The position numbers and the translations under genes are program-made. Positions 1 through 49,152 of a DNA stretch of 64,000 bases are shown here, piece by piece. How positions within the stretch are numbered: the first letter of the stretch is position 1; each line of letters opens with the position of its first letter. Source of the stretch: Stylophora pistillata (Eukaryota); NCBI RefSeq assembly GCF_002571385.2, contig NW_019218148.1, forward strand, positions 137,433 to 201,432, written 5' to 3'. Below the pieces are notes generated by a model. That model ran no database searches, was not told the DNA's origin, and saw only the letters and a list, made by a program, of their open reading frames with translations.

Positions 1-14
1 AAGGATTGACTTAC

Positions 15-470: not shown

Positions 471-950
471 ATGGGTATGCGCAAGAAGAGAATAACTGTA
501 ACTTTGTGCGATCCAAAATCTGTGTATTGCGTCACCTTTCTCAATACAAAGAGTTGTGAGTCAAAAGTTGAGGTTAATCAACCTCATCCACTCACAACTA
601 GCACTTTCAGACAGAATCTTTAGGATTCTAAAATTTGTTTTAAATAGAGAAAATTGCTTTTTGCAACTGCATAAAGCATGTGCTATGAGCTGGGTTCCCA
701 ACAATTGCAATTACAATTTGCATATCCTCTTCCCATCCTCTCCCCAGTGCCCTGGTCATGCAACTCATGGTTGTGCAGATCACTTGAAATCAAAGACTTA
801 ATATACACTTGTCGGCCAAAATTAAAAGAATCTTATTGCCATTTTAATGGAAATTCATAAATGATACACTTTTGATACAAGTACCTACTAACTTTGCATG
901 ATAATTCTATGTGCAAAAGGTAATTTTTCCTATTACACTGTTAAGTATAG

Positions 951-1045
951 TCAAAGTTCATCATGGTCAGTTTCTGTGGGCTCATTGTCAGTCTCATTTT
1001 CATCGTCACTATCATCATACTCGTCATCATCATCAATGCATAAAC
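951..1045 (-). CDS. Candidate acidic terminal exon (G)LCIDDDDEYDDSDDENETDNEPTETDHDEL*
   Basis: Strong acceptor (atgattttcttgcag|GT) at 1045. Phase-1 compatible with SGSM exon 1681-1501. TGA at 953-951. Confidence 0.4.
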
Positions 1046-1064
1046 CTGCAAGAAAATCATACAT

Positions 1065-1356
1065 TACATACATACATACATACATACATCTTTATTTAAC
1101 GAGGGTAACATATTAACTTATACAGTTTTCTAACATACGGCCCTCACCTTCCCACCCCAGGGGAGGACATCCATCACACAGTAATCTTGTGCGTGGGAAA
1201 TTAATGTCTCCTACCCCCAACCCTGCAGGAGACGGGACCTCCATTTATTCATTCCTATCTGAGAAGACTACAATATCTCACCATTTCTTGATGTTATAGA
1301 AAGGTAGCAAATTCTTCTCAATTATTTTAAGACCCTGAGTGTTGGTCCAGCCAGGG
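1065..1356 (-). mobile_element. 5'-truncated SINE with (ATGT)n tail
   Basis: 1141-1356 is the reverse complement of the SINE body at ~32215-32445. It ends in TTAAATAAAG plus (ATGT)n. Confidence 0.8.
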
Positions 1357-1500
1357 ACAGGCTGTACAGTAATACCTTTGAATCATTCAAAGGTATTACT
1401 GTACAGCAAGAAGAAATTTGATGGTGGTCACTCTTGGGGTTCAAAGAGGTTAAAGTAATAATGGAGTTAGCTATAAAAAGAGTTTGTCGTGTAGCCTTAC

Positions 1501-10500: not shown

Positions 10501-11784
10501 ACCAAAACGACTGTTTAAAGTAAGGCACTCCAAAAAGTTATCCTACATTAAAACTATAGAATAACGAAATGACAACGGGGTGCCTATTAATATAAAATTT
10601 CCGATATTGTTGGTCGCGAGACACCGCTAATTTTATTAGGAAATAGCAATTTATTTTATGTGGATACAAAGAGTTTTATAATTTCCAAAGATAAACCAAA
10701 ATATATCACGTAACATCAGTAGTTGAAAACTCCTCCTGAATTATTTGAGCAATCAATAAAGTACTTAATTCGCATTTTTATTTTACGCACAAGTTCACAG
10801 CTAGAAGGAAAATCTTGGATCTTAATGAGTAGTAAGAGTTTTTATTAAAAACCATTGAGCGCAACCTGTCAAGGCTCACATTTTTTGTTATTTTTGATGT
10901 GAGCTGCGTCGTATGAAACACCCGTCCAAACCACACGGGGAATTTATTTGTTTTGATTTTTGTGTTTGATGCCTGCAAAAGCGCGTATCTGGTCGATTTG
11001 CTACTTCCGTACGTGTCTTCGGACACAGGTGAAAACCAAGTCTGATCCCAGAATCAAGAAATAAAATTCTGTGAGTCTATGAAATTCAATTCAATTAAAG
11101 GGCGGGTTTGTGCGTTGAAGCTAGAATTGCTTCCGCGTTTTAAATTCCCATTTTAGCATGCATATAACACTCCACGGATCGACCGCGAAGGAAATGCTTT
11201 AAAATCATACCCAATCAAAATATACAGCCTACAGAAACACTTCCAGTGTTTTTACGATCTTTAAAATTGTCCTTCAGTCGGAAAAATTGTGTAAGAAACA
11301 AATGCAATACTTCTTACCACAAAGGGAGGTTATACTGGAGCTGTCTGCGTGAATAAACTTCCTTGTGACAGCTTCTTCCATAAGTTGTTTGACCTGGGAA
11401 TCGACAAAACAGGTCAACATTTTTAAAACACGAGCATTTCTATCTTTTTAACTTAGCATTGCCAAGGAATTATAAGCACAAAAAATTTTGAAGTGCACGA
11501 CTGCATAATGTAATAAAATAAAGCTGTATATTTGGGAGTAAGCGAAAAAGCGCTATGGAAAAAAAATCAAGTGATTGATCGCTCGACGTTTAAATTTCAC
11601 GAGCGACAACAAAAATGCGCCTTACCTCTTTCTTGAGGTTTTCCAACAATTTCTTTCGCACCTCCGCATCTGAAAACAAAGAAAATAAATCCAAACGTTA
11701 GCATGTCTTTTTCGTCGAGAAGTATTCCCTGAAAGTGCCACAAAACAGTTGTTCTTCGTGAAATTCACCTTTCGAGGGAGCCAT
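1501..11784 (-). CDS. SGSM1/2: Small G protein signalling modulator 1/2-like (RUN + PH-like Rab-binding region), 5' part; the TBC domain would lie beyond the left edge
   Basis: Exons 11784-11769, 11669-11626, 11393-11318, 7660-7478, 7223-7046, 6699-6632, 2622-2339, 1681-1501, all GT-AG and in phase. Peptides [52 protein letters not shown]...LKWTPNKLM and YIHCHQ match SGSM1/2. Confidence 0.93.
2034..2328. repeat. Non-autonomous repeat with a palindromic end (possibly Crypton-associated)
   Basis: Near-palindrome at ~2222-2322 (ATTATTCGC...GAATAATCCCC / GGGGATTATTC...GCGAATAAT). Related diverged copy at ~27770-28050. Confidence 0.55.
3834..3999. mobile_element. hAT5-like MITE (degenerate)
   Basis: Ends CAAGGCTGTG...CTACAATCCTG, flanked by the 5-bp direct repeat AATTT (3829-3833, 4000-4004). 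Confidence 0.5.
4305..5390 (-). mobile_element. Decayed LINE (L2/CR1-like) 3' end, interrupted by another repeat
   Basis: Minus-strand remnants [20 protein letters not shown] / [10 protein letters not shown] typical of a LINE ORF2 C-terminus. AATAAA plus (ATGT)n tail at ~4305-4340. Confidence 0.55.
4410..4824. repeat. Interspersed repeat shared with 47710-48240 and 49153-49680
   Basis: Shared motifs CTCCATAA(C/T)TCGATAGTGCA..TAAAGCATGAACCAATT and an inverted copy of TCGCGA.AATAATGGATACAAACAGA.ACTCGGCC. Confidence 0.7.
8053..9709 (+). mobile_element. Non-autonomous IS3EU-like DNA transposon with long TIRs, in SGSM intron 3
   Basis: Ends TGCGGAAGCCGA...TCGGCTTCCGTA. About 280-bp inverted arms made of AAATCCAAAAAAATATTTTG-type subrepeats. 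Flanks TACTAG/CACTAG (5/6 match, 6-bp TSD). Internal ORF 8425-8742 has a CxxC-CxxC ribbon and an HTH-like '[36 protein letters not shown]'. Confidence 0.75.
8727..9290 (-). mobile_element. Penelope-like retroelement fragment (RT C-terminal region) nested in the transposon
   Basis: Minus-strand translation with stops and frameshifts: [38 protein letters not shown]...[17 protein letters not shown]...[17 protein letters not shown]. Confidence 0.75.
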
Positions 11785-16446: not shown

Positions 16447-17667
16447 TCATTCCTCGATCCAATACTTTGCCGGGTAATTCTCAATAAAAAGTGGTATTGT
16501 AAGATTTCTAAGCACTTCTACTGAACCTTCTGTTGCGATGTAGCCCATTGATGTCATCACATCACGGCAATAACGTTCAATCACGTTCACGTAACATGAA
16601 TCTGTTAAACGTCGCCACTTGTCCAGAATTTCCAAAGAGTTTCTTATAAAAGACATAGGATTTCGTTTCTCCGCTCTTAACTCTTTAGTGCTAGGATGTG
16701 TTATATTGACAATCCATTTTTTAATACTTTCCAACATTTCAAGTCCAGCATACTCATACAAAGATTGTAACACGTCCAGCGGACTAACTGCTAAGTCTTC
16801 GTACCGCACCAGTCTCACACGGCTGCGAAGCGATAACGGAAGATTTCTTACCAGATGAAGATTTGTCTCAGTCATCTGACAAAGAGAATGGACAAATTGT
16901 CTCATAGAGGACTTTTCCTTTCTATCCTTTTCTTTGAAAAAGGATACCTTCTGAGAGGACATTACAACAGGTCTTATATCACGGATCAAATATATAATTT
17001 TGCACTCTACCCCCGCCAATTCGCAAGTTTCAAAAAGTTTCCCAATTGACTGGCCAGGAATCCTTTCCAAGAGAAGCTTATAAACGATAGTATCATGTTG
17101 AACTTTGCACGAAAGCTCAAGGTTTTCCTGTGTTACTGTTAAACAACCTTTTCTTTGCCATCTTGGATCTCCTCGACTAAACGTACAAAACGGTGGAGAG
17201 CTCAACGCTCGGCTATAAAATCGAAAAAATGTACCGATATCCCGAATTGAATTTCCCACACTAAAGTCGCACTTGAAAATGTGGTAAAGAAGGTTGGTTG
17301 CAATTTTATCATAATCCTTCAGTTGAGTTTTTCGAGTTCCATGAAGTGGTTCAAACACGTAAAATACTCGTGGATGTTGGTCGAAAATGCTGGCCAGAAA
17401 TGTAGAACCAGATCTGCCATGGGCAACAATCACCACGATCCGTTGCTTCCTCGCTTGAGGCTTATCTGTCGACTCCACATGAGCCTGCAATGTGGTCATT
17501 GGCTCTGTCAATGAAAATAACCTTTTCGAAGCACCAAATAGATCCTGGCTCAGGACAATGTGTCGGTGCATTGACATTTCGAGAAACGCGAAAAATAAAC
17601 CCAAGGAAACAGCAGAAAGGAACAATAAGAAACCAAAACCAAACCGAATTTTTGCCCATCTAGCCAT
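16447..17667 (-). CDS. Carbohydrate (Gal/GlcNAc/GalNAc 6-O) sulfotransferase, CHST1/3-like, copy A
   Basis: Single coding exon, ATG at 17667. N-terminal type II membrane anchor, 5'-PSB motif HGRSGSTF, VFYVFEPL, 3'-PB-like RDIRPVVMSS, LVRYEDLA. Confidence 0.9.
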   Translation of the reverse strand: MARWAKIRFGFGFLLFLSAVSLGLFFAFLEMSMHRHIVLSQDLFGASKRLFSLTEPMTTLQAHVESTDKPQARKQRIVVIVAHGRSGSTFLASIFDQHPRVFYVFEPLHGTRKTQLKDYDKIATNLLYHIFKCDFSVGNSIRDIGTFFRFYSRALSSPPFCTFSRGDPRWQRKGCLTVTQENLELSCKVQHDTIVYKLLLERIPGQSIGKLFETCELAGVECKIIYLIRDIRPVVMSSQKVSFFKEKDRKEKSSMRQFVHSLCQMTETNLHLVRNLPLSLRSRVRLVRYEDLAVSPLDVLQSLYEYAGLEMLESIKKWIVNITHPSTKELRAEKRNPMSFIRNSLEILDKWRRLTDSCYVNVIERYCRDVMTSMGYIATEGSVEVLRNLTIPLFIENYPAKYWIEE

Positions 17668-19417
17668 TGTTGACAACGCTGATAAATGAGAATCTTTAAA
17701 TGCGTCCTCGCAGCTGCAAAAGAAATTAAGAAATACAGAACTCTATCAAACGAACTATGTCCTTGTTAGCCTTCATACAACTGAAATTGAAGACTGCATG
17801 GTTTCAAATTTACGTCGATCGACCTAAATCTTTAATGTCCTCGTGTTTTCGATGGTTTCATCCCCAAATAAAACAGCAGGTTGTAAACGTATAACTGCGA
17901 ACATTTCCTATATGGAGTTGCAAGGTGAATATCACCAGCTTCCGCTGTTACTATGGGTTGGTTTGTGTATGCAAAATAGTGAACATTTCCTTCAAAACTG
18001 ATTTTTAGAGAACTATGTCGAGTGCAAAATCAATGTAAATGAAATTACAATAACAATGTGGCCTCATTAAAAAAGTTTAATAAATTTCAACTTGTATAGG
18101 AGAGTCTGAAGGCTATTCTAAACTGCACACAACAAAATTACGCAAGTACATTGAAAGAACTTTCAAAAGCAAACCGAAAGAGACGAAACGCGTTTTTTTT
18201 AACGCCCAAATCATGATTGTTAAATTGAATAGTAATTTCAATAGCTGCACTTGACATGTTAAGCAAAATGTAAACTAAATCCCAGAGACTAAATATGTTT
18301 TCAACCCTTCTGTACTACACAGAACTAAACAAAAAACATAGCACAAAGATTTTAGATGAAACTGAAAACAAAGACCACAGAATTCTCCCAATGCCATAGT
18401 ATGTTTACTGTTTGGTCTGTTTTAAGTACCACTCTACCACACTGCAGGTGGAAAATTTTCAGTTCACATTAATGAAATCAAAAACACCTTGGTGAAGAGC
18501 GGTACAATCTGCTAAAACATTAACTCTCATGCGTTATCAATCTGATCACCATCGTAGGCCTTTTGGCACTGAGGGTGACGTGAATACGAAGAACTCCAAA
18601 TATGGTCAACTCACTCTTTCCTGAGAGATCACACTTCACACGGGTAGTTCTCCTTTGTAACTGCAAGACATTTTCTTGAAGATAAGTAAGAAATTTTGGT
18701 TTTTTATCGGACTGGTTTGAGGGAATAGAGAGGAAAAGCAATATTTTCAGCAAATTACGAGTCTCACAATTTTACGATCACTTGATTACCTGCTGTAAAA
18801 GCTTGTTGGTTACCAGACTTTATTAGTAATTATTGTGAGACTCCACCAGATAGGTTTTCCAACATCTTAAAATAAAATTAGAAAGTTTGCACACGTATTT
18901 CAAAATCTATCGTAGCACAAACCAATTTGTGGAATTGACATGACATATTATTTTTCAGTGAAACCAAACCAAATTGAAATCATGAAATCATAGATGTAAT
19001 TAAGATCAGTTTGACTGGGAAAGTCGAGTATAATCGCGAAAATACCCGAGGAAATACCGAGTACTAACGAGGAAAACCAAGCTCGGCTTAGTTTAAGTTT
19101 TTTAGTCCAAGATAAGTAAAGTCGAGAAAATACCGAGCATTTACGAAAACTGAGCCGAGTGTTCGCGAAGAACACCGAATTTGAGATTGCCAAGGTGTTG
19201 AGTACAAGAAAAGTATAATCGGGTAAGTACGGAACAATCACGAAGACCGATCTTGAGATTGTTAAGGTGCTTGATCCAATAAGAGCATAATCAATAATCA
19301 TAAAGAAAACTGAGCTTGAAATTTCCTTAGCAGACCAAACCTTTATGGATTGTCATGGTGATGAACACACGCGTTAGAAATGCACCTTCTCTCTGATCCC
19401 CGCAGTAAACTAGTAAT

Positions 19418-21150: not shown

Positions 21151-22395
21151 CTAGATCCAATTTTGCGCAGTGAAATTCTTGTTAAACAGTGGAATCGTTG
21201 AATTTTGGAGCATTTCCACAGAACCATGTGTTGCAATATAGCCCATTAATTTCATCACATCACGGCAATATCGCTCAATCACATCCACGAAACAAGAATC
21301 TGCCGAAAATCGCCACCTGTTCAGAACTTCCAGTGAGTTTCTTACCATAGAAACTGAGCGTTTTTCCTCGTTTTTCAAGTGATCAAAACTCGGCTGTGTT
21401 ATTTTCACGATCCATTGTTTGATATTTTCTAACATTTCAAGTCCTGCGAATCTATACAAAGAATCGAAAACTTGCAGTGGTTCAGCTGCTAAGTCTTCAA
21501 ATCGCACCAGTCTCAGACGACTGCGAAGAGATGGAGGAAAATTTTTCACTATATCAAGATTCCTTTCAATCATTTCACAGCAAGAATAAACGAACTGTCT
21601 TAAGGATGGTCTTGTCTTCCGATCAACCTCTCGGAAAAAGGCTACTTTGCGAGAGGACATTACAAGTGGTCTTAAATCACGTACTAAATAAATGATTTTG
21701 CATTCAACATCTGCCATTTCGCACACGTGGAAAAGTCTCTCAACTGATTGGCCAGGGACTCTGTCTAAAAGAAGCTTATAAACGACTGTGTTGTGTAGCA
21801 CTTTACACGAGTGTTCAAGCTTTTTTTGAGTCACAGGCGAACAGTACTTTCTCCTCCATTTTGGATCGCCTTGGTTGTACTTGCAAAACGGTGGAGAACT
21901 TAACGCTCGGCTGTAGAAACGAAAGAAACGACCCATCTCCTTGCTTGTATTACCCATACTGAAGTTACATTGAAAAATGTGTTGAAGAAAATTCATCGCA
22001 AATGTATCGTAATCCCCGACTTGAATTTTCCCTATCCCGTGCAGTGGTTCGAACACGTAAAAGACTCGTGGATGCTTGTCAAAAATATCAGCAAGAAATG
22101 TAGAACCAGATCTGCCATGCGCAACCACCAACACGATCTGACGATTTTTCACCTTATGCTTCAACGTCCTCTCTGTAGAATCGTTAACTGAGTTGGTTCT
22201 GTTTTGAGTTTCCAAAGGGGCCTCGTTGGTCGTTAGATTTGATGTTGTAATAAACATACTACCAGACTGTAATACGTTTCTGTTCTTGACAACGTCTCGG
22301 GATGTTTGGAGTAAAGCGAAAAACAAACCGACAGATATGAAAGTGAAAATTAGCAGCAGAATAAGGTTTCGTCGAATTCTCCAGCGAAAGGCCAT
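21151..22395 (-). CDS. Carbohydrate sulfotransferase, CHST1/3-like, copy B
   Basis: 414-aa ORF with a TM anchor, HGRSGSTF, VFYVFEPL, RDLRPLVMSS and VRFEDLA. Clear paralogue of copy A (shared FFRFYSRALSSPPFC, VIERYCRDVM). Confidence 0.9.
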   Translation of the reverse strand: MAFRWRIRRNLILLLIFTFISVGLFFALLQTSRDVVKNRNVLQSGSMFITTSNLTTNEAPLETQNRTNSVNDSTERTLKHKVKNRQIVLVVAHGRSGSTFLADIFDKHPRVFYVFEPLHGIGKIQVGDYDTFAMNFLQHIFQCNFSMGNTSKEMGRFFRFYSRALSSPPFCKYNQGDPKWRRKYCSPVTQKKLEHSCKVLHNTVVYKLLLDRVPGQSVERLFHVCEMADVECKIIYLVRDLRPLVMSSRKVAFFREVDRKTRPSLRQFVYSCCEMIERNLDIVKNFPPSLRSRLRLVRFEDLAAEPLQVFDSLYRFAGLEMLENIKQWIVKITQPSFDHLKNEEKRSVSMVRNSLEVLNRWRFSADSCFVDVIERYCRDVMKLMGYIATHGSVEMLQNSTIPLFNKNFTAQNWI

Positions 22396-25342: not shown

Positions 25343-28300
25343 CTATTTTTCATTGTATATAGACCATAAACTGATTCTGGAATCTTTTCCACCAGCAGCC
25401 AATAGCTGTCCATGGCCAAACAGATCCTCCGAGAAATCCACCGTGTTTATAGTTTGTGTATGGTAATTAAGATAAGCCAATGGTTTGAGTGTTCTCCAGC
25501 TGTAGATTCTTATCCTGAAGGTAAATAAAATCACTAAATAATCGTTGTCCTCACAATTATCATTATATTAATATAAAGCAGTTGTTAGTGCCATGGTTAA
25601 AATTTTCAATATCGACCGCTAAGTTAATGATACTGAATTCGTTGGCATTAATCCTTAACTTCCATTATCTGATTGTTCAAACTCCCCTCTTGCTACACAA
25701 TTCTTTGTGCATCGGTTACAAGAATTTGGCGTTCGATCAAGATGACACCTACCTGATAAGTTTGAGCATATCATTACCCATTTACTGGATAATGTATGGA
25801 TATTTTAGGGAGAAGTTACATGTTAATCACTTCTGGGAGTAAAAGGATTAACAGTGAATAACACTAAATGAAGATAAAAAAAATACCCGTTGTGGAGGGG
25901 AATTTGGGGCAATGAAATTCAACTTAACATATATAAGTAATGGTTAGGGATAATGGGCATTGCTAGAACAACTTCCATTCTGTCAATTCCTTAACTCCTT
26001 AGAGTGACAGCATCTAATTTCTCTTTACAGTACCACCCCTGAATCAAATGTAAAGGTCATGAGAATAAATGCCACTCTCAAGGGTCGAATGGTCAATAAA
26101 ACACCCACCTGCCATCCCATCCACCAGTGGCCAGTATTTGACAATCCTTCCTGATTTTGACTGAAGCAATTCCAGGGTTCTTCAGCTCAATTTCTTTGTC
26201 TGCTGTTATGCTGTGCTAGAGAGAATATAAAAATGATATAATGCATGCAATAATTAGAGAAACAATTCTCACAAGACCCCCTGACATACCTGAGGTGTTA
26301 CTGATGACACACACAGCTTACTGTCTGCTGAGCCAGACACTATTCTAAGGTCCTCTTTGTCTACATCCATACAGAGAACTAAATGTAAAACAAACATGTT
26401 GAAGAAAATAAAGAAATTTTTGCCCATCTAACATTTTAAGAAACAAATAAAGACTTCAAGTTATAGGTTTGAGTTAGGCTAAGAGAAGAGAGACCCAATA
26501 ACTCTTTCACTCCCAAGATCTCAATAGTATTTCTTTTCACTGTCTGCCATACAATTCTTATGATGTTAGTTCTGAGAATTTTTCTTTCAGTCCCAAGATC
26601 TCAATAGTAATTCTCTTCACTGTCCACCATACAATTCTTATGATGTTAGTTCTGAGAATTTGGTAAAGTATCAATTCATAATCCCCAAATTGACATTTTT
26701 CTTTATTCTCATCACTTGTCTGCTTGATATTATATTAATATTGTAAGGAGAAATTCTGTCTTGGTCACTCATGGGAGTTGAGGGGTTCTAATGGTTTCTA
26801 GTAGAAACGTTCTATTATCCTGGAATCACACCACAAAGTAATGATGACAAAGGAAATGTCACCAACTAGGCTTTTGATTGTTGAACAAATTCTCTTTCTC
26901 TGCACCTTAGAGAATATATAGAGAACAGTATGGAGAATATGCATGCAGATGTTAGGGAGTGAGGGGTTGACTTCCGTGGCAGAAACTCAAAACTCCACCA
27001 TGATTGCATGTTTTTAAATGTGTAATCTACCAAAGATTGATAATTAACCTGATTCAGCATGAGTTGGATTTCTACCCAGGATTTGTCTAGCCATAACATC
27101 CCAGAGCAAAAGCTGACCACTTTCGTAACCTGCAATCAAGAGAGGCTTGTCTGTTGCTGGATCAGAGATCAAAGAGATACACATGCACATCCCTGAAAGG
27201 AAAAAAGTCAAAAAGAAAAGTTTACTTATGGTATGCAGTAAGCAAATGGTTACCTAAGTAGATACATTAACCACTATACCAGCTCAAGTTTATGGTTATG
27301 TGGAACAATCTCAGTGTCAGAAAAATAATACAAAAATATGAGTGGTAAGTTTCCAAAGAAACTGTGGTGCTACATTTGTGGGGGATATTCTGAGATAACT
27401 TTGTGTTAATAAGTAAAATTAATGAGAATTGGCCATCACAGGGCTCGACACCAACTTTTCAACTTACTAGCCAAGTGGTTAGTGACATCTTAGATGTTAC
27501 AACAAATTTTCAGTTTGTTTACCAGTCAAACTGGCTGCCCTGCGGTGGAAATCGAAAGCCACTAGCCAAAACTGAATTTCTACTAGTCTGTGGCTAGTGG
27601 GCTACTGTTAGTGTCAAGCCCTGCATCAACAGAGGGTTTCCAAGGCTGATGTTTTATGCATTAGCCCTTCAACAGAGAGAAAGACAAAGGGTTATTGCTC
27701 AAAAATTCATCCTCAGGAGCTCTCGAGAGTGGCTGATTTACATCATCCACTTAGTTCATAAACCAAATTAGTATATACCACACAGGTGAATTATGGTTTT
27801 CCCATGTGTTGATTGGCTAGTTCAGAAGTGAAATAGCAAGTACTATCCACCTCCAAGTAGCTGATGAGACAAAACTGTTTGTCAAGTTTAATTTCCAACC
27901 ATTCCTCAGAATAATGAAAGAAATAAACTATCTCTTTTATATTTGTGGCATATACTAAAACAATTATTCACCTTGGTTTTGTTGAAAGTGCTTCGCGGCT
28001 TGGTAAATATCCACCACTATTCACCTCCACTTCCATGAATAATGTTACATATAAGAAACTATTGACTAACTTGTTGGTTGCTTGAGAGAAACATTTGGCT
28101 CTAGGTTCTGATCACAAACTAACAAAATAATTTATTCACACACAACTTACCAAGTGACTTTTCATTATCAGGTTTTAGAGAAAACAGGATTTCTTTAGAC
28201 TCCAGATCAAGTATATTTACCTATGGTCAATGTTAAAGAAGAATTACATTAAACAAACCTAATTTGTTAGCTTAGACAGCATTATCACCCTCACATCTTT

Positions 28301-30414
28301 TACCTCTTTGGTCAACACACCAAGTATAAACTTTTTAAAATTCATAAAACTTTTCTGACACCTACAGCAAAACAAGATTGGAGGGCAACTACCAAAACCA
28401 GAAAGAAAATGATGCTTAACCTTTGCATTTAGTTTCTCCTTACAATATGACCCCTAAATCACACACTTAAGTCACAAGAATAAAGGAAATGATCCCCAAC
28501 TAAAGGAGTTTTTGATTGTTAAACAAATTCTCCTTGTTAGTGCCTTGGCAAGTGCACAGAGAACAGCAAAGAGAATATGGATATTGATGTTAGGGTGTAA
28601 GGGGTTAACCCTTGCACTCCCAAGATCTCATTAGAAATTCTCCTTACTCTCTGTCATACAATTCTTGTAATGTCAGTTTGGAGAATTTGGTATTATATCG
28701 ACTGGTGATCCCCTTGTTGATATTTTTCTTTATTCTCATCACTTGTCTGCTTGATACTGTATTGAAGTTGTAAGGAGAAATTCTGTCTTGGTCACTTGTG
28801 GTATTGAAAGGGTTTAGGATTAGAGCTTGACGATGAAGGGCTAACGACGAAGGGCTAACGCTCGAAACGTCAGCTTTTCTAATCATTACGGTGGCCAATT
28901 TACCATTTCAACTTAGTTGATATATCCAAATTATTTTGTTACTCCCACCGACGCAGCCCCAAACAGTTTCTTTCAAAACTATCAGCCTTTATTTATGATA
29001 ACCACAACCTACCAATAAAGAAGACAATAAACTGTAGTCTTTATTACCTGGGAATGACTAGCTGATGGGAGACCAATCCAATGTGACTTGTATCCTGTAA
29101 ATGTAAATATTTATGAAATAGCTTCAAATGAGCTAATTAGGTAAAAGTAACGGTATGCTATTTTAAAATTATGTGAGTGAAGTTCATTGGCCATATTATC
29201 AAAGATGTGCAAAACAATGAATGCAGGAAAATATTGACGTGGAAGGGCACTGGATATGGGGGAACACAGAGGGACACAAGTGGGCACCGCAGCAGTAAAC
29301 ATAGCTAATCCATGGCCTAGTGTGAAGGTGAATTCCAGATAAAGAATAAAAAAAAAAGTATATCTAACTGTTTACATTACCTCTTGACATAATACAAAAC
29401 TGACAAAATCCAAGAAAAGGGGCTGAAATACTATTTACTATTTCATGTCTTCCTTCAGAACACTGCCATGTTTGTAAATACCCATCCCTACCATGGCTGA
29501 AATCAGTTAAAAAAGAATAGACAGAAAATAAGTCATCCAATAAAAATATTCACCAGATAGTTAATGTGATAATCATAGTAACGATTTTGGAATCAGCTTA
29601 GATATAAACTTTTTTAACCTGAGAATTAAATTTAACAACTATGATACTCAACATCCCTAATAATTATTAGATCAGTAACTGTTACAGACAGGGTATCTTA
29701 ACTCTTCTTGGTTAAGAGAAAGACAATTTAAGAAGCTATAACAAAAGAGGGGTAATTTTCAAGTTAACTTGCCTAGTAGGCATAGGCATATGGTACCTTA
29801 TTACATTCCCACAAGGTTGAAATTCAGCAGCAAGGATGGCATGTCCATTATGACCATCTAAAGTTACCTCTGATCTTTTTGTTTTAAGATTCCATAAACT
29901 AATGATCCCTTTAGCAGACCTGTGAAATCAAGAGTCAAAAAGGCATCACAGTATTCCAGCTTCGTAATGTCTCTTCTGTACACATCCTGAAGGCCATTTT
30001 TCTAGTGGGGAGGGGGTGGGGGGAGCGGGAGAGGACTTAAGGGAGAAGGTGAGTTTGACTAATTCACTTTCAGATGTATCCTAAGCACAATCAGATGGAT
30101 AGGCAAGATTTCCGTATAATCCCATACTTCGTTACCTTTGGGATTACGGCTTTGTTTTTGACTGGTATGGGGTTATACGGAAATCTTTCCGATGGATATT
30201 TTTCAGATTACACATTAGCAGTACGGAGAATGACTGTTTCAAACATAACTCAACATGTGATCAACTAAACTCCCAGATGTTATGTGCACAAACCGTACCC
30301 AGAAAGTAGAAGCCCCTCTTCCCTAACAGTCTTTGGAGCAAACTTGACGACATTTAAGGCTGCTTCCGTACCGCGCAGAACATACAATGGATCTGGAGGG
30401 CTTCTATTTTCCAT
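25343..30414 (-). CDS. GNB1L: GNB1-like WD40 protein (Asa1 orthologue, PIKK/TTT co-chaperone), 327 aa
   Basis: Exons 30414-30299, 29919-29797, 29496-29381, 29094-29048, 28220-28151, 27192-27049, 26378-26290, 26215-26109, 25514-25343 (984 nt, in frame). PPDPLYVLRGT, NPGIASVKIRKD, ATGGWDGRIRIYSWRTLKPLAYL and LLAAGGKDSRISLWSIY match GNB1L. Confidence 0.93.
27439..27623. mobile_element. hAT5-like MITE
   Basis: CAGGGCTCGACAC...GTGTCAAGCCCTG with the 5-bp TSD CATCA, inserted in a decayed hammerhead-type repeat. Confidence 0.75.
28605..28816. mobile_element. Abundant TTAA-CCC MITE family (piggyBac-like ends), representative copy
   Basis: TTAACCCTT...AAGGGTTTA ends. Related copies or fragments at ~7758-7932, 25652-25851, 26500-26787, 26860-26970, 28417-28608, 31333-31537 and 32735-32930. 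Confidence 0.7.
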
Positions 30415-30790
30415 GATAATGACATGCTTTCACACTTCTTTCCTCAAAACTGCTTCTTTTTATCAGGCATCAACAGGCATTACTTGGCAGTACGAAAGGG
30501 AATAGAACTAGTAACGTATACCACTGTTCCAGATACTTTCGGGCTCAATCAAAATGGCCACAAACTTCTGCGGCTGTTACAATCAAATGGCATCAAGTCT
30601 TAATTTTCTCTTTCCTATTTCGGTTGTGTAGGAAGTAATATTTAATGGGTCTATTCTTAGAATGAAGGTTTATACATCCAATTTTACTGACTGGGTTTTG
30701 AATCGAAGATTGCGTGACACGCAATGAACGGTATAAATTCACACGAATCCAATTTCGAATTGAATTGCAACTTTTGCGTCAGTCGCAGTA
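30415..30790. promoter_or_regulatory. Probable bidirectional promoter/5'UTR region of GNB1L and DGCR8
   Basis: Only 376 bp between the divergent ATGs. YY1-like AAAATGGCC at ~30551. Confidence 0.6.
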
Positions 30791-33700
30791 ATGTCAGTTG
30801 ACATTAGTGTAAATGAGTTAGCAGTTGTTGTCAAAGCACCAACGGTATTAACTGTTGGCGAAAATAGTGAATTGAGAACTGAAATTGAAAAAATGGAAAA
30901 TACCATGGAAAAGGTCTCCTCCTCGGCTGGTATGGATATACCGACTTATTCTAAGGAGGAATCTACTGACGAAGAGATGCCGTTTGAGACTGAGCGAATA
31001 CCGCTCAAGAGAAAGTCCGAGGAAGACTTATTGGACCACAATCATAAACGACGGATGACAGAAGGTGATCAAGCTGATGACTGGGAAAATGTAATCAGTA
31101 CAACAGGAGATGAAAAGCAAGAAGGAGAAAACCCAACAGATGAACAAGAACGCAAGGTTATTATCTGTAAGTGTTAACCATTCTTTCTGTTTTCAGATAA
31201 GTGTTATGGTGCGAATACTTTAAACTTTGAATATTTTACAACAATAATCGCGGCTGGTTTTCATGTTTGTGATGAAAATTCTTGAACATAGCTGTATTAT
31301 AAATGAACGGGGCGGGTGCTTCCTTAATGCTGCTAACCCTTTAACTCCAATGAGAAACCAAGATAGAGTTTCCCCCTTCAATGTCTTTACAATATCAAGC
31401 AGACAAGTGATGAGAAGAAAGAAAACTATAATCAGGAGATTATTGGTTGATCTAATACCAAATTCTCTGAACTGATATTGTAAGACTGGAAAACAGTAAA
31501 GAGAATAGATCATTAGATCTTGAGAGTGAGATGGTTAGTGAATGATTTCCAGAGTGAAGAGTCTCTTTTCCTTTTAATAAATTAATAAATTAGAACTAGA
31601 GAGTGAGATGGTTAATGAATGATTTCCAGATTGAAGAGTCTCTTTTCCTTTTAATGAATTATGGCATGAAACATGAATTAAGGCTGATGAATCCTATCTT
31701 CCCTGAAATGTGTTCTTTGAATGAACACCAAAACACTCAATTACTCCCCTATGTTTCATGTGTGTATTTACTTAACTTTTGTTTTTTGTCTCTTCTAGTG
31801 AAGGGAAATCTACCAAAGCTGGCATTACCAGAGGGCTGGATAGCACTTAATCATCGCAGTGGAGGAATCATTTATCTCCATAAGCCGTCAAGAGTGTGCA
31901 CATGGTCTCGTCCTTATCACATTGGTGGAGGAAGCGTCAGGGTAACAATTTCTTTTTGTTTTATACAACATATAATTTGCAAGCAAAGACAGGATTAAAT
32001 TCATTTATTTGCTAGCAGTTCTACTAAGGGCTCTTTTAAAAATCTATTACAAGTCTTTTGATTCTCAATGTACCACAAAGAGTATAAAAAAGTAATTTGC
32101 CTTTTTACAACCCTCCCATTTTTCTATCGTATTGCTGACAATTGAGCTAGCCTCCTGGTTAGCTCAATTGGTTAGAGCACCGGATTGTGTTGTGCAGGAG
32201 GTCGAGGGTTCGAGCCCCGGCAGGACCAATACTCATGGTCTTAAAATAACTGAGGAGAATTTGCTACCTTTCTATAACATCAATGAAATGGAAAGATATT
32301 CTAGTCTTCTCAGATAAGGACGAATAAAATGGAGGTCCCATCTCCTGCAGGGTTAGGGGTAGGAGACGTTAATTTCCCACACACGAGATTACTGTGTAAT
32401 GGATGTCCTCCCCTGGGGTGGGATGTGTGGTGGGAAAAGGTGAGGTCGTTACATGGACTAAAGTGGCTGCCAGAGGCGCCTGATAAGTCTGACATCCGAT
32501 CTCAACCTTAGTAACACTGTAGACCTTAGCAATTCAGCCTATGCTGCTATTAAGGTATCGAATCATTCACTTTCACTTCACTTTCACTTTCCAAAATGAT
32601 TCAGTTAGTACCATTTAGATACAACGATGTCCTCTTTATAACTTTACTTTAAAGTGGTGAGGGAAACACAACCTGTGTTGTAGTCCACATTTTTGTAATA
32701 AAACTGTGGGAGCAAATTAGAACACTTGTTACCATTCAATCCCAGGGGTGACAAAAAAGGAATTTCTCATTAAAATGTCAACACATTTTCAAGCAGAAAG
32801 GTAATAGGAAGAAAGAAAGATATTAACTGAGGAATTTTCTTCAACTTGATAACAAATTCTCAGAGCTGAAGACTAAAGAAACATAGAGAAGACAGATCTG
32901 ATATTTCCAGGTTATATCTTGTGAGTAAGAGGGCCTGTTCAAAAATGCTGAAACAATTATTACAAATAGACTGCCTTGTTGTCTTTCACTTGCCTGCATC
33001 TTGCGCTTGCCTTAAAACTGCTACTGGTGGGTCTTTACTGCCTACGGGTAGCACTTTTAGTCACATGCAAGGAGCATATGTAGAGTGAAATGGGAATTAT
33101 TGTTATAGAGTTGTAGAGTGAAATGGAAATTATTGTAATAGAGGTGTAAAGATTCAACTTGACAGATCTAGCAGAGGGCTTCTGGAATTGTTTTCAAAGA
33201 CTGGATACTACTTATCCAGAGTGTTCTTGTAACACAGTGGTCAGAACTTCCAGTGCCTGTGTGTGGGGGACTATGGATCTGACTTGGGAACACCAAATGC
33301 AATGGAGACAGTTTGGAGGTTTAGCTTCTTAGCATATGTTCATAAAAGAAGTGCTAGAGTCATTTCTTTTGGGGAATGCTTGAAAGGGAAAAATCTGTAG
33401 CTTAAAGTGTCTAAGGGGTGCCAACCTTGAAAGCTAGAATTCAATCAGCTTAATCAAGTTCCTCTACCGTCCCCCTATTTGTCACTGGACAGAACTTACT
33501 ACACATGGAAAGTTGTTAAAATGCACCCGCATAATCACATAAACTCACGGCCATCTGTGGAGAGAAAACCCTGTTCTTACTATAGATATCAAATTCACGT
33601 CTCTTATCCTCTTCACCTTCTACTTTCCCCTTATCATATATTAAACAATTACTTAATGAGCTGTAAAGAACAGTGTGAGAACCAGTTTGTCACCAGAAAC

Positions 33701-36700
33701 TTCCAGATAAGCTGGGAAGGTTGACATTTATATGTATGTTTATACACTGAACTGATCAGTAACTGTATTTATTATACAGCTATACTCTGTAGAGTACAAA
33801 TAACACCCAAGATGAGTACAAATATCACGCATTATTTGTACTTTAGAGTACTGGTTAGACAGGTTTTCTTGCATCACATAAGCACAAATTGCACAAATTG
33901 GATTGAAGTCACAAAAAAAATGGCAGACAATTTAAATCATTTTTCTGACAACAAAATGTCTAATAAGTTATTTATTATCCAACACACCAAACTGTTATTT
34001 CAGTGCAGGCGAATTTCACGGATATTTATTTACGGGGAGTGCGTGACAGAAGTATGCGAAGTGGAATGGAATTGGCGCATTGTTGTGTCGCTGTTTCTAT
34101 TTTCTTCACTAAATGATTAGAAGAAATTTTCTGGTCGTCAAGTTGTTTTTCTTCGTTCAATTCATCTAATGAACTTGGACCTATATTTGCCAGCCATTCT
34201 GACTCTTCGTCATCGGAAATATGATTCAAATTGTCTGGCACTTTTTTTTTTCATAACTACAATCCAATTCTTTGCTTGCGCAATGCGAGAAAACCTGTTT
34301 AACCAGCACTACAAGAGACGAGTACAAATACTGCGTGATATTTGTACCCATCTATGGCGTTATTTGTACTCCTCTAGGTGTAGTTGGATAATAATCAGTG
34401 ATACTACACAACAAAATGTCTAATAAGATATATTTAGTTGTCTAAAGACTGAGCTTGACTATTAGCTGAGGCCCCAAACTTGAGAAAATTAATTCTTTAC
34501 CATCAGTTATATTTAGTAATCAACAGCATAAAAGCAAGAAGTACTGTAATCTGATCCCAATTCACTGTTCTTCCTTATCAGTTGAAAGCTCTTCCCAAAC
34601 TCAGTAAAAACTATACAAAAGCTATCAAGGTTGTTCAAATTTAGACCAATTTTGATTTTCTGATGTGAAATGAATGTCTACTACAAACTGTGAACTTTCA
34701 GAAACATGATGTACCATTGGCTGCAATTCCATGCCTCCACCAGAAAAAGGGAATAAATCAAGAGAATACTGAAGAAACAAAATCAGAGAATGGTACCTCC
34801 AAATCAAAAAACCCAGCAGGTTCGATATTAAATGCTCTGAATACCCAGGATGTTGAAAAATGTGTTGCAAATACCAGCGTAGTAAAAAATACCAGTGAAG
34901 AACAAGAAGAAACTACTGACAGCAATAAGAATACTCCACCAACTTTGGAGTTATTAGACATTGGAGAACTTGGAAGTTACCTTTCGACCATATGGGAGTT
35001 TCAAACCCTTACATCAGAACAAGAACGGTATGCTGTGATGGCTTTGCCACAGACTGAAGATGATGTTGAATTACCTTCCAGTCTGGAGTGTTTATCATAT
35101 TCAGTAAAAGGTGCAGAGAATGGAAAGAGCCCCAGTAAATATTGTCTGTTGAATGCTGGTGGTAAAACACCGGTGGCTATCTTACATGAGTATTGTCAAC
35201 GAATTTTGAAATCCAAACCAGTTTATCTTGCAAGTGAAAGTGCAAGTTCAGATAGTCCCTTTGTGGCAGAGGTACAAATAGATGGCATCAAATATGGCTC
35301 TGGAACTGGTTCCAGTAAGAAAATAGCTCGCCAGATTGCTGCTGAATCTACTCTTGAAGTTCTGTTACCAGGGATGTTTAAAAAAATTCGCGATTATCAG
35401 ATTTCTGATGCCGAGCTAGAGGTAGGGCTTAGTAAAGACAATCTATACTTACCAGTACTTCAGTAACCCCATCAGTACCAGTTGGCTATGAAGCTTCGCT
35501 ATCATTATCATTCAGTAAATGGTTTGAACCCTGGGGTAACATGTGAAGGTGTAGTCTGATCGTCTGAGTGAGTATGGTCCTGAGAAGGACTGTTGTGGGT
35601 GGTAGTGACTGACGTTTCGACAACCTGTGCGGAAGTCATCATCAGAGTCAAGATGATGACTTCCGCACAGGTTGTCAAAACGTCAGTCACTACCACCCAC
35701 AACAGTCCTTCTCAGGACTACACTCACCCAGACGATCAGACTACACCTTCACATCATTATCATTATTAATCATCATCATTATTATTATCAATCATCATCA
35801 TTATCATTATTAATCATCATCATTATCATTATTAATCATCATCATTATCATTATCGATTATCATCATTATCAATTATCATTATTAATCATCATCATTATC
35901 ATTATTAATCATCATCGTTATCATTATCGATCATCATCAATATCATTATCAATCATCATTATCATTATCCTCATCATCATAACTGTCATTGACTTTGACA
36001 ATATCTCCTTCAGTATTACAATATTGATACTGTTTATTGAATTATTTTCTTTTTTTTCCTTTTTCTTTATCATTACAGTTTTTTGATCAAGTAGACATAT
36101 TGAACCCTCGGCTTTTCGAGTTTTGCTCAAAAACTTCTCTCCCCAGTCCCTCGCAAATCCTCGAGGAGTGTCTAAGAAGGTGGGTAGATATTTTTAAAAG
36201 TTTTCTTTTGTCTTTGATCATAAAAGTGCAGAAACATTTGATAACTGTTTTATTGCATCGACTGATGTATGACCAAAATTCTCTGTTTTCTTTTCTTTTC
36301 TTTTTTTGATACAGGAATCAAGGTATCTGCTCATCCATTGAGTTTAAAACAGTCTGCGGACAGAACAAAAGTCTATCATTTATTATAACATGTGGCAAGC
36401 ACACTGCAACGGTAAATTCGAAAATATCTTATCTTCTACCGATTAGTTAGGAAAATGTAAGAGGCAATTGTAATTTTCGTTGTCGTTTTTGGTCGTTTAC
36501 GAAGCTGAGGTACACGGATCTGTGAATCTCACAGCTTTTGACAACACTTTAGCATATCCAAGTTGACAAATGGCTCTGTCAAAGGGCTAACGCACGAAAC
36601 GTCAGCTTGGAAACTCTTTACGGTGACCAATTTAGATTAGCAACTCATTTAGTAAAACCATAATTACCAAGTTGAGCAAAGTCTAATAAAAATGGCAAAA

Positions 36701-38501
36701 GATAGTGGAAACATTCCATGCCTCGTTCGCGGCCAGAGGTCGCCCCAGATAGCTGTAGCAGAGCCGTGAATGGGAGAGCCAAGAGGAGCATCTATCAAAG
36801 ATATTGTTATTGGAAAATTTAACCCTCTTTTATTTGCAGGGTCCTTGTAAAAACAAACGAAATGGCAAGCAGTTAGCGTCACAGCACATCCTCAAAGTGA
36901 GTGTGGAAATAAGTAAGCTTAACTTTGTGTGCATACATTCTGCAGTGCATGTTTGTTTTAAAGATGAAGCATGCACTTTGACGGCTGGATTTTTTGCTAC
37001 GTGTTTCATGCGTCAACAATTGACCTCCTGACGATATTGTAATTCCTCTCCGTGGATTTGTTAAATGCTTTACAAATGTGTTTCTATCAGGCTCAAAAGC
37101 CAACTTATTTTCGAAGACCCTTCTTTTTTTTCGACAACCGTAATATTCGGGGAAAAATAAAGACAAACGTATGACACATTTAGGAATGTTACTGCGCGAA
37201 GTATATTCAAATTAGTAAAATTCTTTGGCTGATGAATGTGAATTTAATTTGCCTGAATTCCGACGTTTCTCGAGTGCTACTTTTTAACACCATTATATAG
37301 AGCTACTTTCACGTTTTTGACATAGACTACACGCATTATATGACCTATTTGATTTCAATTTTATGTCTTTTGTAGAAACTGCATCCTCATCTCGAAAAAT
37401 GGGGAGCACTTATTCGGATCTACTGCGACAGACCCACGGGGTCAATAAAAAAGGTAAGCGTCATATAATTCAGAAATCATAACCTGTTAAGTTTTGATAC
37501 AAACTTATTGTAATGTAATCAGATCGGACCGATGTTATTCACTTCTCCAGTACTTACGATTAAAAAGATAACTAAGTGAGGCACATACAAATTAAGGTGG
37601 TGAGTTTAAAATGAAACTGTAGCACTACGTAGGCGGAGGGTATTGCAAGATAATTTGGTTTTATCATCTGAGTTGATAATGTGAATTGGCCGCCGTAAAG
37701 AGATTCGCTCTGACAAAAGGGCTTTTGGTTGCCAAACAGAAACGTGAGATTTTGAATCTCTTTACAAAAGCCAAGTCACTCTATATATATAAGTACAGTC
37801 AAGTCGTTTTATGGTTTAGGTTCTTAAAAAAGTTGAGCGTAAAAGGTCTTTCTCTGTTGGTGTGACTTGGTTTGCCTTACTACATCATATGAGAGGTAAG
37901 TTTTGTTGCTAGTATGAAATTTCTATGCGAAATTTATTTGTTTGTTGTCTACTGTTTTTTTTTAGTACAAAAAAGATGACAGTGAAACAGCCAACGAGAA
38001 ATCAGGGGGCAACTCTTCTACAAATACTGATTTACTCGAGCGTCTCAAAAGCGAGATGAGAAAAATGTATTCTGAGGTATGTTCGTAGACTGCCATGCAG
38101 CAAACTACACAGCCATCCCAACCTACAACACGGACAACCCATGCCAATTGTGCATCGCTGTCAACTCATATTCAAGCAATCTTGTTACCAGGATCCTATC
38201 TTTTTCTTCCTCGGGAAAGGAAGGGAGAGGACCCTGGGAACGAAGGTCCCCCCCCCCCCTCGACATAATTATAAATGAGGGGTTGTGTTTCTTTCCCTTT
38301 CAAGTAAGTGGCACTTTCTTCACATTTTAACCCAAGCACAGCAAAGATATTTACTTACAACTGGATGTTTTATACCTACGTTTCTTCATTATATATATAT
38401 TTTTTCATTTCTTATTTCCTTTTTTGTTGCAGAATGAAAACGCAAACAGGATGGACGCTATGGATAAACCAGCAGAACCAGTGTTTACTGTGACCATCTA
38501 A
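30791..38501 (+). CDS. DGCR8: Microprocessor subunit DGCR8/Pasha, 583 aa
   Basis: Exons 30791-31166, 31799-31941, 34702-35421, 36079-36179, 36315-36411, 36840-36896, 37376-37453, 37966-38076, 38433-38501 (1752 nt, in frame). WW motif LPEGW...YLHKPSRVCTWSRPY, heme motif IPCL, dsRBD1 (KTPVAILHEYCQR...SKKIARQIAA), dsRBD2 (KNKRNGKQLASQHILKKLHPH) and tail NTDLLERLKSEMRK. Confidence 0.95.
32150..32590 (+). mobile_element. Full-length tRNA-derived SINE in DGCR8 intron 2
   Basis: Pol III box A TAGCTCAATTGG (32160) and box B GGTTCGAGCC (32207). Body shared with 1141-1356. (TTTCAC)n tail. Confidence 0.85.
33758..34440. repeat. Non-autonomous element with internal inverted repeats
   Basis: GAGTACAAATA...TATTTGTACT hairpins near both ends. 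The segment at ~33913-33950 (AAAAAATGGCAGACAATTTAAATCAT) recurs inverted at ~34209-34250. Confidence 0.5.
35541..35754. repeat. Long inverted repeat (103-nt arms, 8-nt loop) followed by an ATC/ATT microsatellite to ~35980
   Basis: 35541-35643 is the near-perfect reverse complement of 35652-35754. Confidence 0.92.
35607..35649 (-). ncRNA. Minimal type I hammerhead ribozyme motif, antisense in DGCR8 intron 3
   Basis: Minus strand GACT-CTGATGA-T-GAC(TTCCGCACAGGTT)GTC-GAAA-CG-TC^AGTC: perfect 4-bp stem I, intact core boxes, ACGT stem III. Confidence 0.62.
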
Positions 38502-48909: not shown

Positions 48910-48940
48910 GAATCTCTATTAAAATAGTATATATTTTCCA

Positions 48941-49152
48941 NNNNNNNNNNNNNNNNNNNNNNNNNNNNNNNNNNNNNNNNNNNNNNNNNNNNNNNNNNNN
49001 NNNNNNNNNNNNNNNNNNNNNNNNNNNNNNNNNNNNNNNNNNNNNNNNNNNNNNNNNNNNNNNNNNNNNNNNNNNNNNNNNNNNNNNNNNNNNNNNNNNN
49101 NNNNNNNNNNNNNNNNNNNNNNNNNNNNNNNNNNNNNNNNNNNNNNNNNNNN
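48941..49152. other. Assembly gap (N run)
   Basis: 212 N. Confidence 1.

What the first reader, a model, noticed from the sequence alone, without database searches (positions are those of the whole stretch)
25343..38501. GNB1L and DGCR8 adjacent, with SGSM nearby: possible ancient linkage of human 22q11 genes
Seen: GNB1L and DGCR8 are immediate head-to-head neighbours, and an SGSM1/2 gene starts ~13.5 kb from the GNB1L stop. Known: human GNB1L and DGCR8 both lie in the 22q11.2 DiGeorge deletion interval and SGSM1 lies in 22q11.23. Inference: part of the DiGeorge neighbourhood may date to the cnidarian-bilaterian ancestor.
Basis: partly seen in the sequence, partly recalled or inferred. Interest (0 to 1): 0.75.

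Follow-up and report, generated by a model that had tools for sequence, protein, structure and literature searches.

The report
Coral GNB1L and DGCR8 share promoter
In this stony coral the counterparts of two human DiGeorge-region genes, GNB1L and DGCR8, sit back to back and are read outwards from one short shared control region, but whether this pairing is as old as the coral-human ancestor is still open.

Summary
A 9-exon GNB1L orthologue (minus strand, 25343-30414) and a 9-exon DGCR8 orthologue (plus strand, 30791-38501) lie head to head, 376 bases between start codons. Both are single-copy best hits. Stranded RNA reads show divergent transcription, switching strand between about 30486 and 30561. 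An SGSM1/2-type gene starts about 13.6 kb from the GNB1L stop, but two sulfotransferase genes and a repeat array lie between.

The same head-to-head pair occurs on an independent contig of another stony coral (L007). It was absent from five arthropod-like metagenome contigs with 2.4-10 kb upstream of DGCR8. Six other 22q11.21 gene families tested gave no hit on this 333-kb contig, so no wider "DiGeorge neighbourhood" exists here.

In human, GNB1L and DGCR8 are separated by four or five genes; fly and worm counterparts are dispersed.

My odds: pair older than the cnidarian-bilaterian split about 0.4; arose within Cnidaria inside a conserved ancestral chromosome about 0.5. If ancient, it is one more member of a known class of about 600 conserved pairs.

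In passing: a conserved, single-copy 115-nt hairpin in DGCR8 intron 2. This scan has noted other ancient-synteny blocks elsewhere in this genome.

The parts
25343..30486 (-). GNB1L orthologue with 9 coding exons: 30299-30414 (ATG at 30414; exon 1 runs on as 5'UTR to at least 30486), 29797-29919, 29381-29496, 29048-29094, 28151-28220, 27049-27192, 26290-26378, 26109-26215, 25343-25514 (stop included). Total 984 nt, 327 codons plus stop.
   Evidence: RNA joints 29917>30297, 29496>29797, 29093>29380 and 28216>29044, with canonical ends after the stated shifts. The remaining boundaries come from AG/GT sites. The frame is open with no internal stop. Collinear tblastn and HMM hits to fish GNB1L cover 7 exons. 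Fish GNB1L has its best hit in the coral genome here.
30415..30790 (.). Shared divergent promoter region, 376 nt between the two start codons. The transcribed strand switches between about 30486 and 30561.
   Evidence: Stranded raw reads from X21 and X24 put first mates only on + over GNB1L exons and only on - over DGCR8 exon 1. RNA contigs end at 30486 and begin at 30561, and one contig spans 30297-31094. Sequence. Conservation with L007 is only patchy.
30561..38501 (+). DGCR8/Pasha orthologue, 583 aa. Exons by match to the database model P0001: 30791-31166, 31799-31941 (WW), about 34699-35421 (IPCL haem site and dsRBD1), about 36079-36180, about 36313-36411, about 36840-36896, about 37376-37453, about 37966-38073, about 38433-38501.
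   Evidence: tblastn of P0001. RNA joint 31166>31799 with GT..AG ends. Human DGCR8 chains at E=1e-29. Pfam dsrm and WW. All 9 genome matches of P0001 lie in this window.
32983..33097 (+). Conserved hairpin in DGCR8 intron 2. It lies in the sense orientation and is single-copy.
   Evidence: It is 87.8% identical to L007 and 88.7% to L002, while exons are 73-83% identical. Fold energy is -44.1 kcal/mol with z=-3.99. The consensus has 41 pairs in 3 corals. There is one copy in the genome and no Rfam match.
1..11697 (-). 5' part of an SGSM1/2-type gene (RUN plus PH_RBD). It continues beyond the window start. The start codon is not resolved.
   Evidence: Pfam RUN 2.6e-05 on 7443-7700 and PH_RBD 5.6e-15 on 1325-1858. 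Exon pieces. A TBC-like ORF was seen by eye at C364:130750-131580.
16447..17676 (-). Single-exon sulfotransferase gene lying between SGSM and GNB1L.
   Evidence: ORF of 409 aa. Pfam Sulfotransfer_1 and Sulfotransfer_3 at about 2e-12.
21151..22395 (-). Second single-exon sulfotransferase gene, a tandem paralogue, lying between SGSM and GNB1L.
   Evidence: ORF of 414 aa. Pfam Sulfotransfer_3 3.4e-11 and Sulfotransfer_1 5.3e-09.

Best explanation
GNB1L and DGCR8 form a real, expressed, divergently transcribed gene pair in this stony coral. Their start codons are 376 nt apart, and their transcripts begin within a stretch of at most about 175 nt (30436-30609), most likely 30486-30561. One short bidirectional promoter region therefore serves both genes. 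That much is shown; co-regulation is inferred.

The pair is kept in at least one other stony coral. The nearby SGSM gene, together with SELENOM-like and SEC14L-like genes on the same 333-kb contig, fits descent from the ancestral chromosome that also gave rise to human 22q11-q12. That is linkage without conserved order.

On present evidence the tight pairing most likely arose, or is at least only documented, within Cnidaria. The four-to-five-gene spacing of the human orthologues is then leftover or chance proximity, not a preserved 'DiGeorge neighbourhood'.
For: Orthology rests. The GNB1L reading frame is open over 327 codons.

Divergent transcription and splice joints were seen in 2 of 2 raw stranded RNA runs and 2 of 2 RNA contig sets.

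The same arrangement, including the downstream GPCR gene, occurs on L007 at 73-88% exon identity.

No wider neighbourhood exists. TANGO2 lies on C82, the RanBP1 family on C7, C17 and C143, UFD1 on C132, CDC45 on C272 and HIRA on C32, and the TRMT2A family gave no hit. So 0 of 6 families are on C364 and no two share a contig.

None of 5 arthropod-like contigs with 2.4-10 kb upstream of DGCR8 carries a GNB1L-like exon at HMM E<=1. Fly and worm homologues are dispersed (PMC4487986 passages).

Gene order inside ancestral linkage groups is largely scrambled between phyla (PMC8809688 passages).
Against: The human orthologues are close: four conserved genes lie between them, plus C22orf29. By my recollection they also point away from each other, as in the coral.

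My rough estimate is that random order on a chromosome of about 440 genes gives at most 5 intervening genes in about 3% of cases. The gene count is recalled and the figure is not simulated.

Head-to-head pairs with short spacers are the class most often conserved over deep time (PMC3514665 passages). Arthropods and nematodes have lost most such pairs, so their negatives weigh little. No slowly evolving outgroup was examined.
Confidence: 0.5

Rival explanations
1. The head-to-head GNB1L-DGCR8 pair is an ancestral microsyntenic pair already present in the cnidarian-bilaterian ancestor and held together by its shared promoter. In the vertebrate lineage TXNRD2, COMT, ARVCF and TANGO2 came to lie between the two genes while their divergent orientation stayed. 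Arthropods and nematodes lost the linkage.
For: The pair is tight and divergent, with a spacer under 1 kb, and is expressed in the coral. It is kept in a second stony coral. The human orthologues lie in the same 22q11.21 interval, 4-5 genes apart. In a needlefish both genes are on the same 33,069,024-bp chromosome, with protein accessions 41 apart. About 600 such pairs are known, half of them pre-bilaterian and enriched for the 5'-5' orientation (PMC3514665 passages).
Against: Only one phylum shows the adjacency. The human spacing is at or beyond the published limit of four intervening genes. None of 5 arthropod-like contigs has the pair, and fly and worm are dispersed. TANGO2, one of the human intervening genes, is on another coral contig. 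The intergenic sequence is poorly conserved even between two corals. The human gene orientation is recalled, not checked.
Confidence: 0.4
2. The WD40 gene is not the GNB1L orthologue but another WD40 protein, so there is no 22q11 link.
For: Pfam and PDB searches of single exons return only generic WD40 families. No tree was built.
Against: Fragment searches led only to GNB1L-named proteins. Seven exons match fish GNB1L in order along its whole length. The model has 327 codons, and the fish GNB1L proteins are 327-328 aa. In the coral genome, fish GNB1L hits this locus at 1.5e-12 and the next locus at 7.4e-6.
Confidence: 0.03
3. The adjacency is a misassembly of this draft genome.
For: The assembly is fragmented into 5513 contigs, and the window holds two runs of N.
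Against: No N lies between the genes. An independent contig from another coral has the same order. RNA-library contigs and reads cover the junction.
Confidence: 0.02

Closest known systems
Conserved ancestral microsyntenic pairs (CAMPs) of Irimia et al. 2012 (PMC3514665), for example HSPE1-HSPD1
   Same: Two unrelated genes lie in 5'-5' orientation with a spacer under 1 kb, and their orthologues are also near each other in human.
   Different: [quoted passage not shown] Here only the cnidarian lineage is shown. Human has 4-5 intervening genes and arthropods have none of the linkage. The pair is not named in that paper's main text (0 occurrences), and its supplementary lists could not be seen.
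Mammalian bidirectional promoter pairs inside 22q11.21, such as TRMT2A-RANBP1
   Same: A housekeeping-type pair is read outwards from one short region. TRMT2A and RANBP1 are stated to share a bidirectional promoter in a passage of PMC6554986.
   Different: The partners differ. In human, by recollection, neither GNB1L nor DGCR8 has the other as its head-to-head partner.
Ancestral linkage groups (chromosome-scale synteny) of Simakov et al. 2022 (PMC8809688)
   Same: SGSM, GNB1L and DGCR8, plus SELENOM-like and SEC14L-like genes on the contig, have human counterparts on 22q11-q12. The human positions of the last two are recalled.
   Different: Linkage groups carry no conserved gene order, whereas the GNB1L-DGCR8 pair is a tight adjacency. 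I could not assign the contig to a named linkage group.
DGCR8 mRNA hairpins cleaved by the Microprocessor in vertebrates (autoregulation; recalled, not read here)
   Same: A long conserved hairpin lies in the sense strand of the DGCR8 primary transcript.
   Different: The coral hairpin lies in intron 2, not in the 5'UTR or first coding exon. Cleavage and small RNAs were not tested.

Membership tests
GNB1L orthologue | WD40 propeller protein of about 327 aa | tested here: met
   The 9-exon frame has 327 codons and no internal stop. WD40 and beta-propeller Pfam hits fall on exons.
GNB1L orthologue | Reciprocal best hit with named GNB1L | tested here: met
   Coral last exon to fragments; fragment P0156 to named fish GNB1L partials; P0172 to 388 hits, of which the best 120 listed are fish and most named ones are GNB1L. 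In the other direction, fish P0177 has its best coral hit at this locus (1.5e-12, against 7.4e-6 for the next). The test is at exon level and through a chain, not one full-length search.
GNB1L orthologue | Collinear similarity along the whole protein | tested here: met
   An HMM of 90 fish GNB1L proteins hits 7 minus-strand exons in order, at positions 3-39, 35-67, 78-119, 154-201, 203-227, 235-268 and 267-324. tblastn agrees. The two short exons (29048-29094 and 28151-28220) gave no separate hit.
GNB1L orthologue | Placement inside the GNB1L clade in a tree | not tested
DGCR8/Pasha | WW-containing haem-binding region with the IPCL motif | tested here: met
   Pfam WW 0.0033, below the curated cut-off. 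LPxGW and IPCL motifs lie 47 residues apart in P0001, as in most of the other full-length DGCR8 representatives scanned. These columns are invariant in 37 sequences. HMMER aligns 'aipclhqkk' to human 'sipclhykk'.
DGCR8/Pasha | Two double-stranded RNA-binding domains | tested here: inconclusive
   The first is clear: Pfam dsrm 6e-16 and human DGCR8 at E=1e-29. The second is split over four small exons that gave no Pfam hit singly. It is seen only as conserved columns in the 37-sequence alignment.
DGCR8/Pasha | Single orthologue in the genome | tested here: met
   All 9 matches of P0001 lie on C364 within the window.
SGSM1/2 (RUTBC) type | RUN, then PH-like Rab-binding domain, then TBC domain | tested here: inconclusive
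   RUN and PH_RBD are met. The TBC part lies outside the window and was only seen by eye, not scanned.
Conserved ancestral microsyntenic pair (Irimia 2012) | [quoted passage not shown] | tested here: not met
   The adjacency is shown in one lineage only (stony corals). Human has 4 conserved genes between the pair plus C22orf29. None of 5 arthropod-like contigs has it. Fly and worm are dispersed. Other lineages were not examined, so this is 'not met so far', not 'excluded'.
Conserved ancestral microsyntenic pair (Irimia 2012) | Conserved 5'-5' orientation | not testable with these tools
   The coral pair is divergent. The human orientation is only recalled, because no human gene map was at hand.
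Bidirectional promoter pair | Divergent transcripts whose 5' ends lie less than 1 kb apart | tested here: met
   The strand switch lies inside 30436-30609 in raw stranded reads. RNA contigs end at 30486 and begin at 30561.
Bidirectional promoter pair | Correlated expression of the two genes | not tested
   Both genes are covered in 4 of 4 runs laid, but no comparison across conditions was made.
Same ancestral linkage group as human 22q11-q12 | Significant excess of shared orthologues at chromosome scale | not testable with these tools
   The contig is 333 kb in a 5513-contig assembly. No linkage-group tables were at hand and supplements are closed.

The most novel reading that the evidence does not exclude
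GNB1L and DGCR8 were a single divergently transcribed unit with one shared promoter in the last common ancestor of cnidarians and bilaterians. The human 22q11.21 arrangement (GNB1L ... four or five genes ... DGCR8, pointing apart) is the stretched remnant of that unit. Part of the DiGeorge deletion interval would then be more than 600 million years old. A co-regulation of a PIKK-chaperone-type WD40 protein (function recalled) with the microRNA Microprocessor subunit would be ancestral.
Probability: 0.4. Interest if true: 0.45.

Novelty: new member of a known kind. Interest (0 to 1): 0.3.

Why it matters
If the pair proves ancestral, it adds one named case to the roughly 600 known deeply conserved gene pairs. 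It would also give a testable idea for 22q11.2 biology: GNB1L and DGCR8, both dosage-sensitive candidates in the deletion syndrome, may once have shared regulation.

If it proves cnidarian-only, it is an ordinary bidirectional pair inside a conserved ancestral chromosome. It would then be a caution that nearness of human orthologues is expected now and then by chance.

The test is now simple: look up gene order around the named DGCR8 accessions in chromosome-level genomes.

The conserved intronic hairpin may matter more. It could be a microRNA precursor or a Microprocessor self-regulation site in an early-branching animal.

Tried and rejected
**GNB1L identity**
- Pfam and PDB searches of single GNB1L exons gave only generic WD40 matches, and I found no GNB1L chain in the PDB.
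- The first word search with the last exon found only 6 unnamed coral fragments. I then walked from fragment P0156 to a 195-aa named fish partial and on to full-length fish GNB1L. This used all 3 searches, so no invertebrate full-length GNB1L was obtained and no tree was built.

**Cross-species gene order**
- A metagenome scan with a 37-sequence DGCR8 alignment gave 38 loci. Only 1 (L007) held GNB1L exons. Most others were too short, were transcripts, or were arthropod-like.
- The taxon labels rest on the best named representative. They are weak for L018, L022 and L026.
- The viral-contig scan found nothing.

**Wider neighbourhood**
- Six Pfam families of other 22q11.21 genes were sought in the coral genome. 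None was found on C364. The assembly is fragmented, so this rules out a tight cluster, not chromosome-scale linkage.
- I read the rest of contig C364 by eye only. The names I give its genes (ABHD11-like, LONRF-like, NIF3L1-like, CENPV-like, ERCC6-like, SEC14L-like, flotillin) were not scanned. The human map positions I attach to them are recalled.

**Literature**
- 'GNB1L' with 'microsynten' gave 0 papers.
- 'GNB1L', 'DGCR8' and 'synteny' together gave 2 papers, both clinical.
- 'DGCR8' with 'microsynten' gave 6 papers. I read passages of the top one, PMC5381642, whose microsynteny analysis concerns AGO and PIWI genes.
- The claim that the pair is not in print holds for main texts of this library only. 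Supplements were closed, including the pair lists of PMC3514665.

**Promoter motifs**
- The alignment with L007 shows only short conserved patches. I make no motif claim.

**Considered and dropped**
- Misassembly and wrong orthology; see the rival explanations.


Full report
**Where the window lies.** The window is G000:C364:137433-201432, part of a 332,963-base contig in a 397.6-Mb, 5513-contig assembly. Earlier notes of this scan and the run labels call the organism a coral. Base composition is even, at about 35-40% G+C.

**DGCR8.**
- On the plus strand an ORF starts at 30791. A 265-residue stop-free stretch at 34669-35463 matches human DGCR8 chains at E=1e-29, and the next family, ILF3, scores only 8e-07.
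- Pfam finds a dsRBD (6e-16) and a weak WW domain (0.0033).
- A search of 1.84 billion representatives returned P0001, 583 aa and 99% identical, which is this gene's own model.
- P0001 maps onto nine exons ending at 38501.
- All nine genome matches of P0001 fall in the window, so the gene is single-copy.
- The WW motif and the IPCL haem site are invariant columns in an alignment of 37 DGCR8 proteins.

**GNB1L.**
- The minus-strand exons between 25343 and 30414 gave only generic WD40 hits in Pfam and the PDB.
- A spliced model may not be searched joined, and the word search sees only proteins of similar length. I therefore walked through fragments:
  - the last exon found 6 coral fragments;
  - fragment P0156 found 21 proteins, and the informative names among them were fish GNB1L;
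  - the 195-aa partial P0172 found 388 proteins, of which the best 120 listed are all fish and most named ones are GNB1L.
- Fish GNB1L and an HMM of 90 fish sequences hit seven coral exons in order along the whole protein.
- In the coral genome, fish GNB1L hits this locus best, at 1.5e-12 against 7.4e-6 for the next locus.
- RNA joints revealed a 47-nt exon that I had missed. With AG/GT boundaries the nine exons give 327 codons and no internal stop.

**SGSM and what lies between.**
- Minus-strand exons from about 11697 down to the window start carry RUN and PH_RBD domains. The gene runs on beyond the window.
However, two single-exon sulfotransferase genes and a repeat array lie between SGSM and GNB1L.

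**How the pair works.**
- The two start codons are 376 nt apart.
- I laid four RNA runs on 28000-33200: two of stranded raw reads and two of contigs.
  - GNB1L exons are covered only by pairs whose first mate lies on the plus strand.
  - DGCR8 exon 1 is covered only by pairs whose first mate lies on the minus strand.
  - The switch falls in bin 30436-30609.
  - Contigs end at 30486 and begin at 30561, and one contig spans 30297-31094.
- Divergent transcription from one short region is therefore shown.
- Shared regulation is inferred. The spacer is poorly conserved even against another coral.

**How old the pair is.**
I therefore scanned metagenome contigs with the DGCR8 alignment and obtained 38 loci.
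- One locus, L007 (16.5 kb), is collinear with the window from GNB1L exon 2 to the downstream GPCR gene, at 73-88% exon identity. It carries GNB1L exons 1-2 on the opposite strand upstream of DGCR8. L007 is thus a second stony coral with the same arrangement.
- Six loci have at least 2.4 kb upstream of the first DGCR8 match. The other five (L014, L018, L022, L026, L028) are arthropod-like by best named representative and hold no GNB1L-like exon.
- In human the order is GNB1L, TXNRD2, COMT, ARVCF, TANGO2, DGCR8. Fly and worm homologues are dispersed (passages of PMC4487986).
- In a needlefish both genes lie on one chromosome, with protein accessions 41 apart. That accession order reflects gene order is my assumption.

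**No wider neighbourhood.** Six other 22q11.21 families were sought in the coral genome. None is on C364 and no two share a contig; TANGO2, RanBP1, UFD1, CDC45 and HIRA lie on other contigs and the TRMT2A type gave no hit. By eye the contig also holds SELENOM-like and SEC14L-like genes (human 22q12, recalled) and ABHD11-like and Mondo genes (human 7q11.23, recalled). This fits chromosome-scale linkage without order (passages of PMC8809688).

**Weighing the evidence.**
[quoted passage not shown] That is not met so far.
- Human nearness within five genes would arise in roughly 3% of random orders on one chromosome. This is my estimate, with the gene number recalled.
- Head-to-head pairs are the class most often conserved.
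- I put the ancestral reading at about 0.4 and the cnidarian-only reading at about 0.5.

**In passing.** A 115-nt block in DGCR8 intron 2 is better conserved than the exons in three corals. It folds as one long hairpin on the sense strand, is single-copy, and matches no Rfam family.

Noticed in passing
window 32983-33097 (+); L007:4858-4972; L002:351-465; L004:1-41: A 115-nt block in DGCR8 intron 2 is 88-89% identical in two other coral contigs (L007, L002) and 90% identical over a 41-nt partial copy at the start of L004, while exons are 73-83% identical. It folds into one long imperfect hairpin on the sense strand (-44.1 kcal/mol, z=-3.99). The consensus has 41 pairs: 6 with one-sided changes that keep pairing, 2 each broken in one sequence, and no double changes. 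It is single-copy in the genome and has no Rfam match at E<=0.1. It is a candidate intron-hosted microRNA precursor or Microprocessor self-regulation site.
   Followed up: partly
L002:1-3791: This coral contig carries the 3' part of DGCR8 intron 2, including the hairpin, followed by residues 171-583 in only two aligned pieces over 1.5 kb. The later introns therefore seem to be spliced out while intron 2 is kept. It may be a transcript with a retained intron.
   Followed up: no
window 28696-29043, 31306-31479, 32176-32523: Dispersed repeats inside GNB1L and DGCR8 introns have RNA depth up to about 930, against about 5 on the exons. Coverage is on both strands, with many loose ends and opposite-strand joints, so the signal comes from copies elsewhere. 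The same repeat translation ('...DQDRISPYN...SSRQVMRIKKN...') recurs in several introns.
   Followed up: no
window 35602-35693 (-): A near-perfect hairpin antisense to DGCR8 gives weak sub-threshold Rfam hits: mir-759 at 41.5 bits against a gathering score of 100, and mir-1744 at 36.2 against 73.
   Followed up: no
window about 14500-15800: A tandem array produces overlapping minus-strand ORFs with a repeated Cys/Ser/Val-rich unit ('...CLSDCASDCASLCPSVCQTVRLIARPSVLL...'). G+C there is 45.5%, the highest in the window.
   Followed up: no
window 47684-48124 and 48919-49563, around the N run 48941-49152: Two nearly identical ORF sets ('MRSLQHQSIKMWRDFDEPKGTF...') flank an assembly gap, which suggests a duplicated segment or an assembly repeat.
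   Followed up: no
window 39086-41070 (-), 44982-46091 (+), 52653-53735 (+); also C364:250691-264506: There is a cluster of rhodopsin-type GPCR genes downstream of DGCR8 (Pfam 7tm_1 down to 1e-44). The first one is also downstream of DGCR8 in L007.
   Followed up: partly
C364:117087-118295, 122088-122360, 237613-239808, 308634-309902: By eye the contig also holds an ABHD11-like hydrolase, the SELENOM acidic tail, the Mondo ORF and a SEC14L-like gene. Their human counterparts, by recollection, lie at 7q11.23 and 22q12, regions often treated as paralogous.
   Followed up: no
G000:C82:126550-144467: Two tandem copies of a TANGO2 gene lie on the minus strand of another contig.
   Followed up: no
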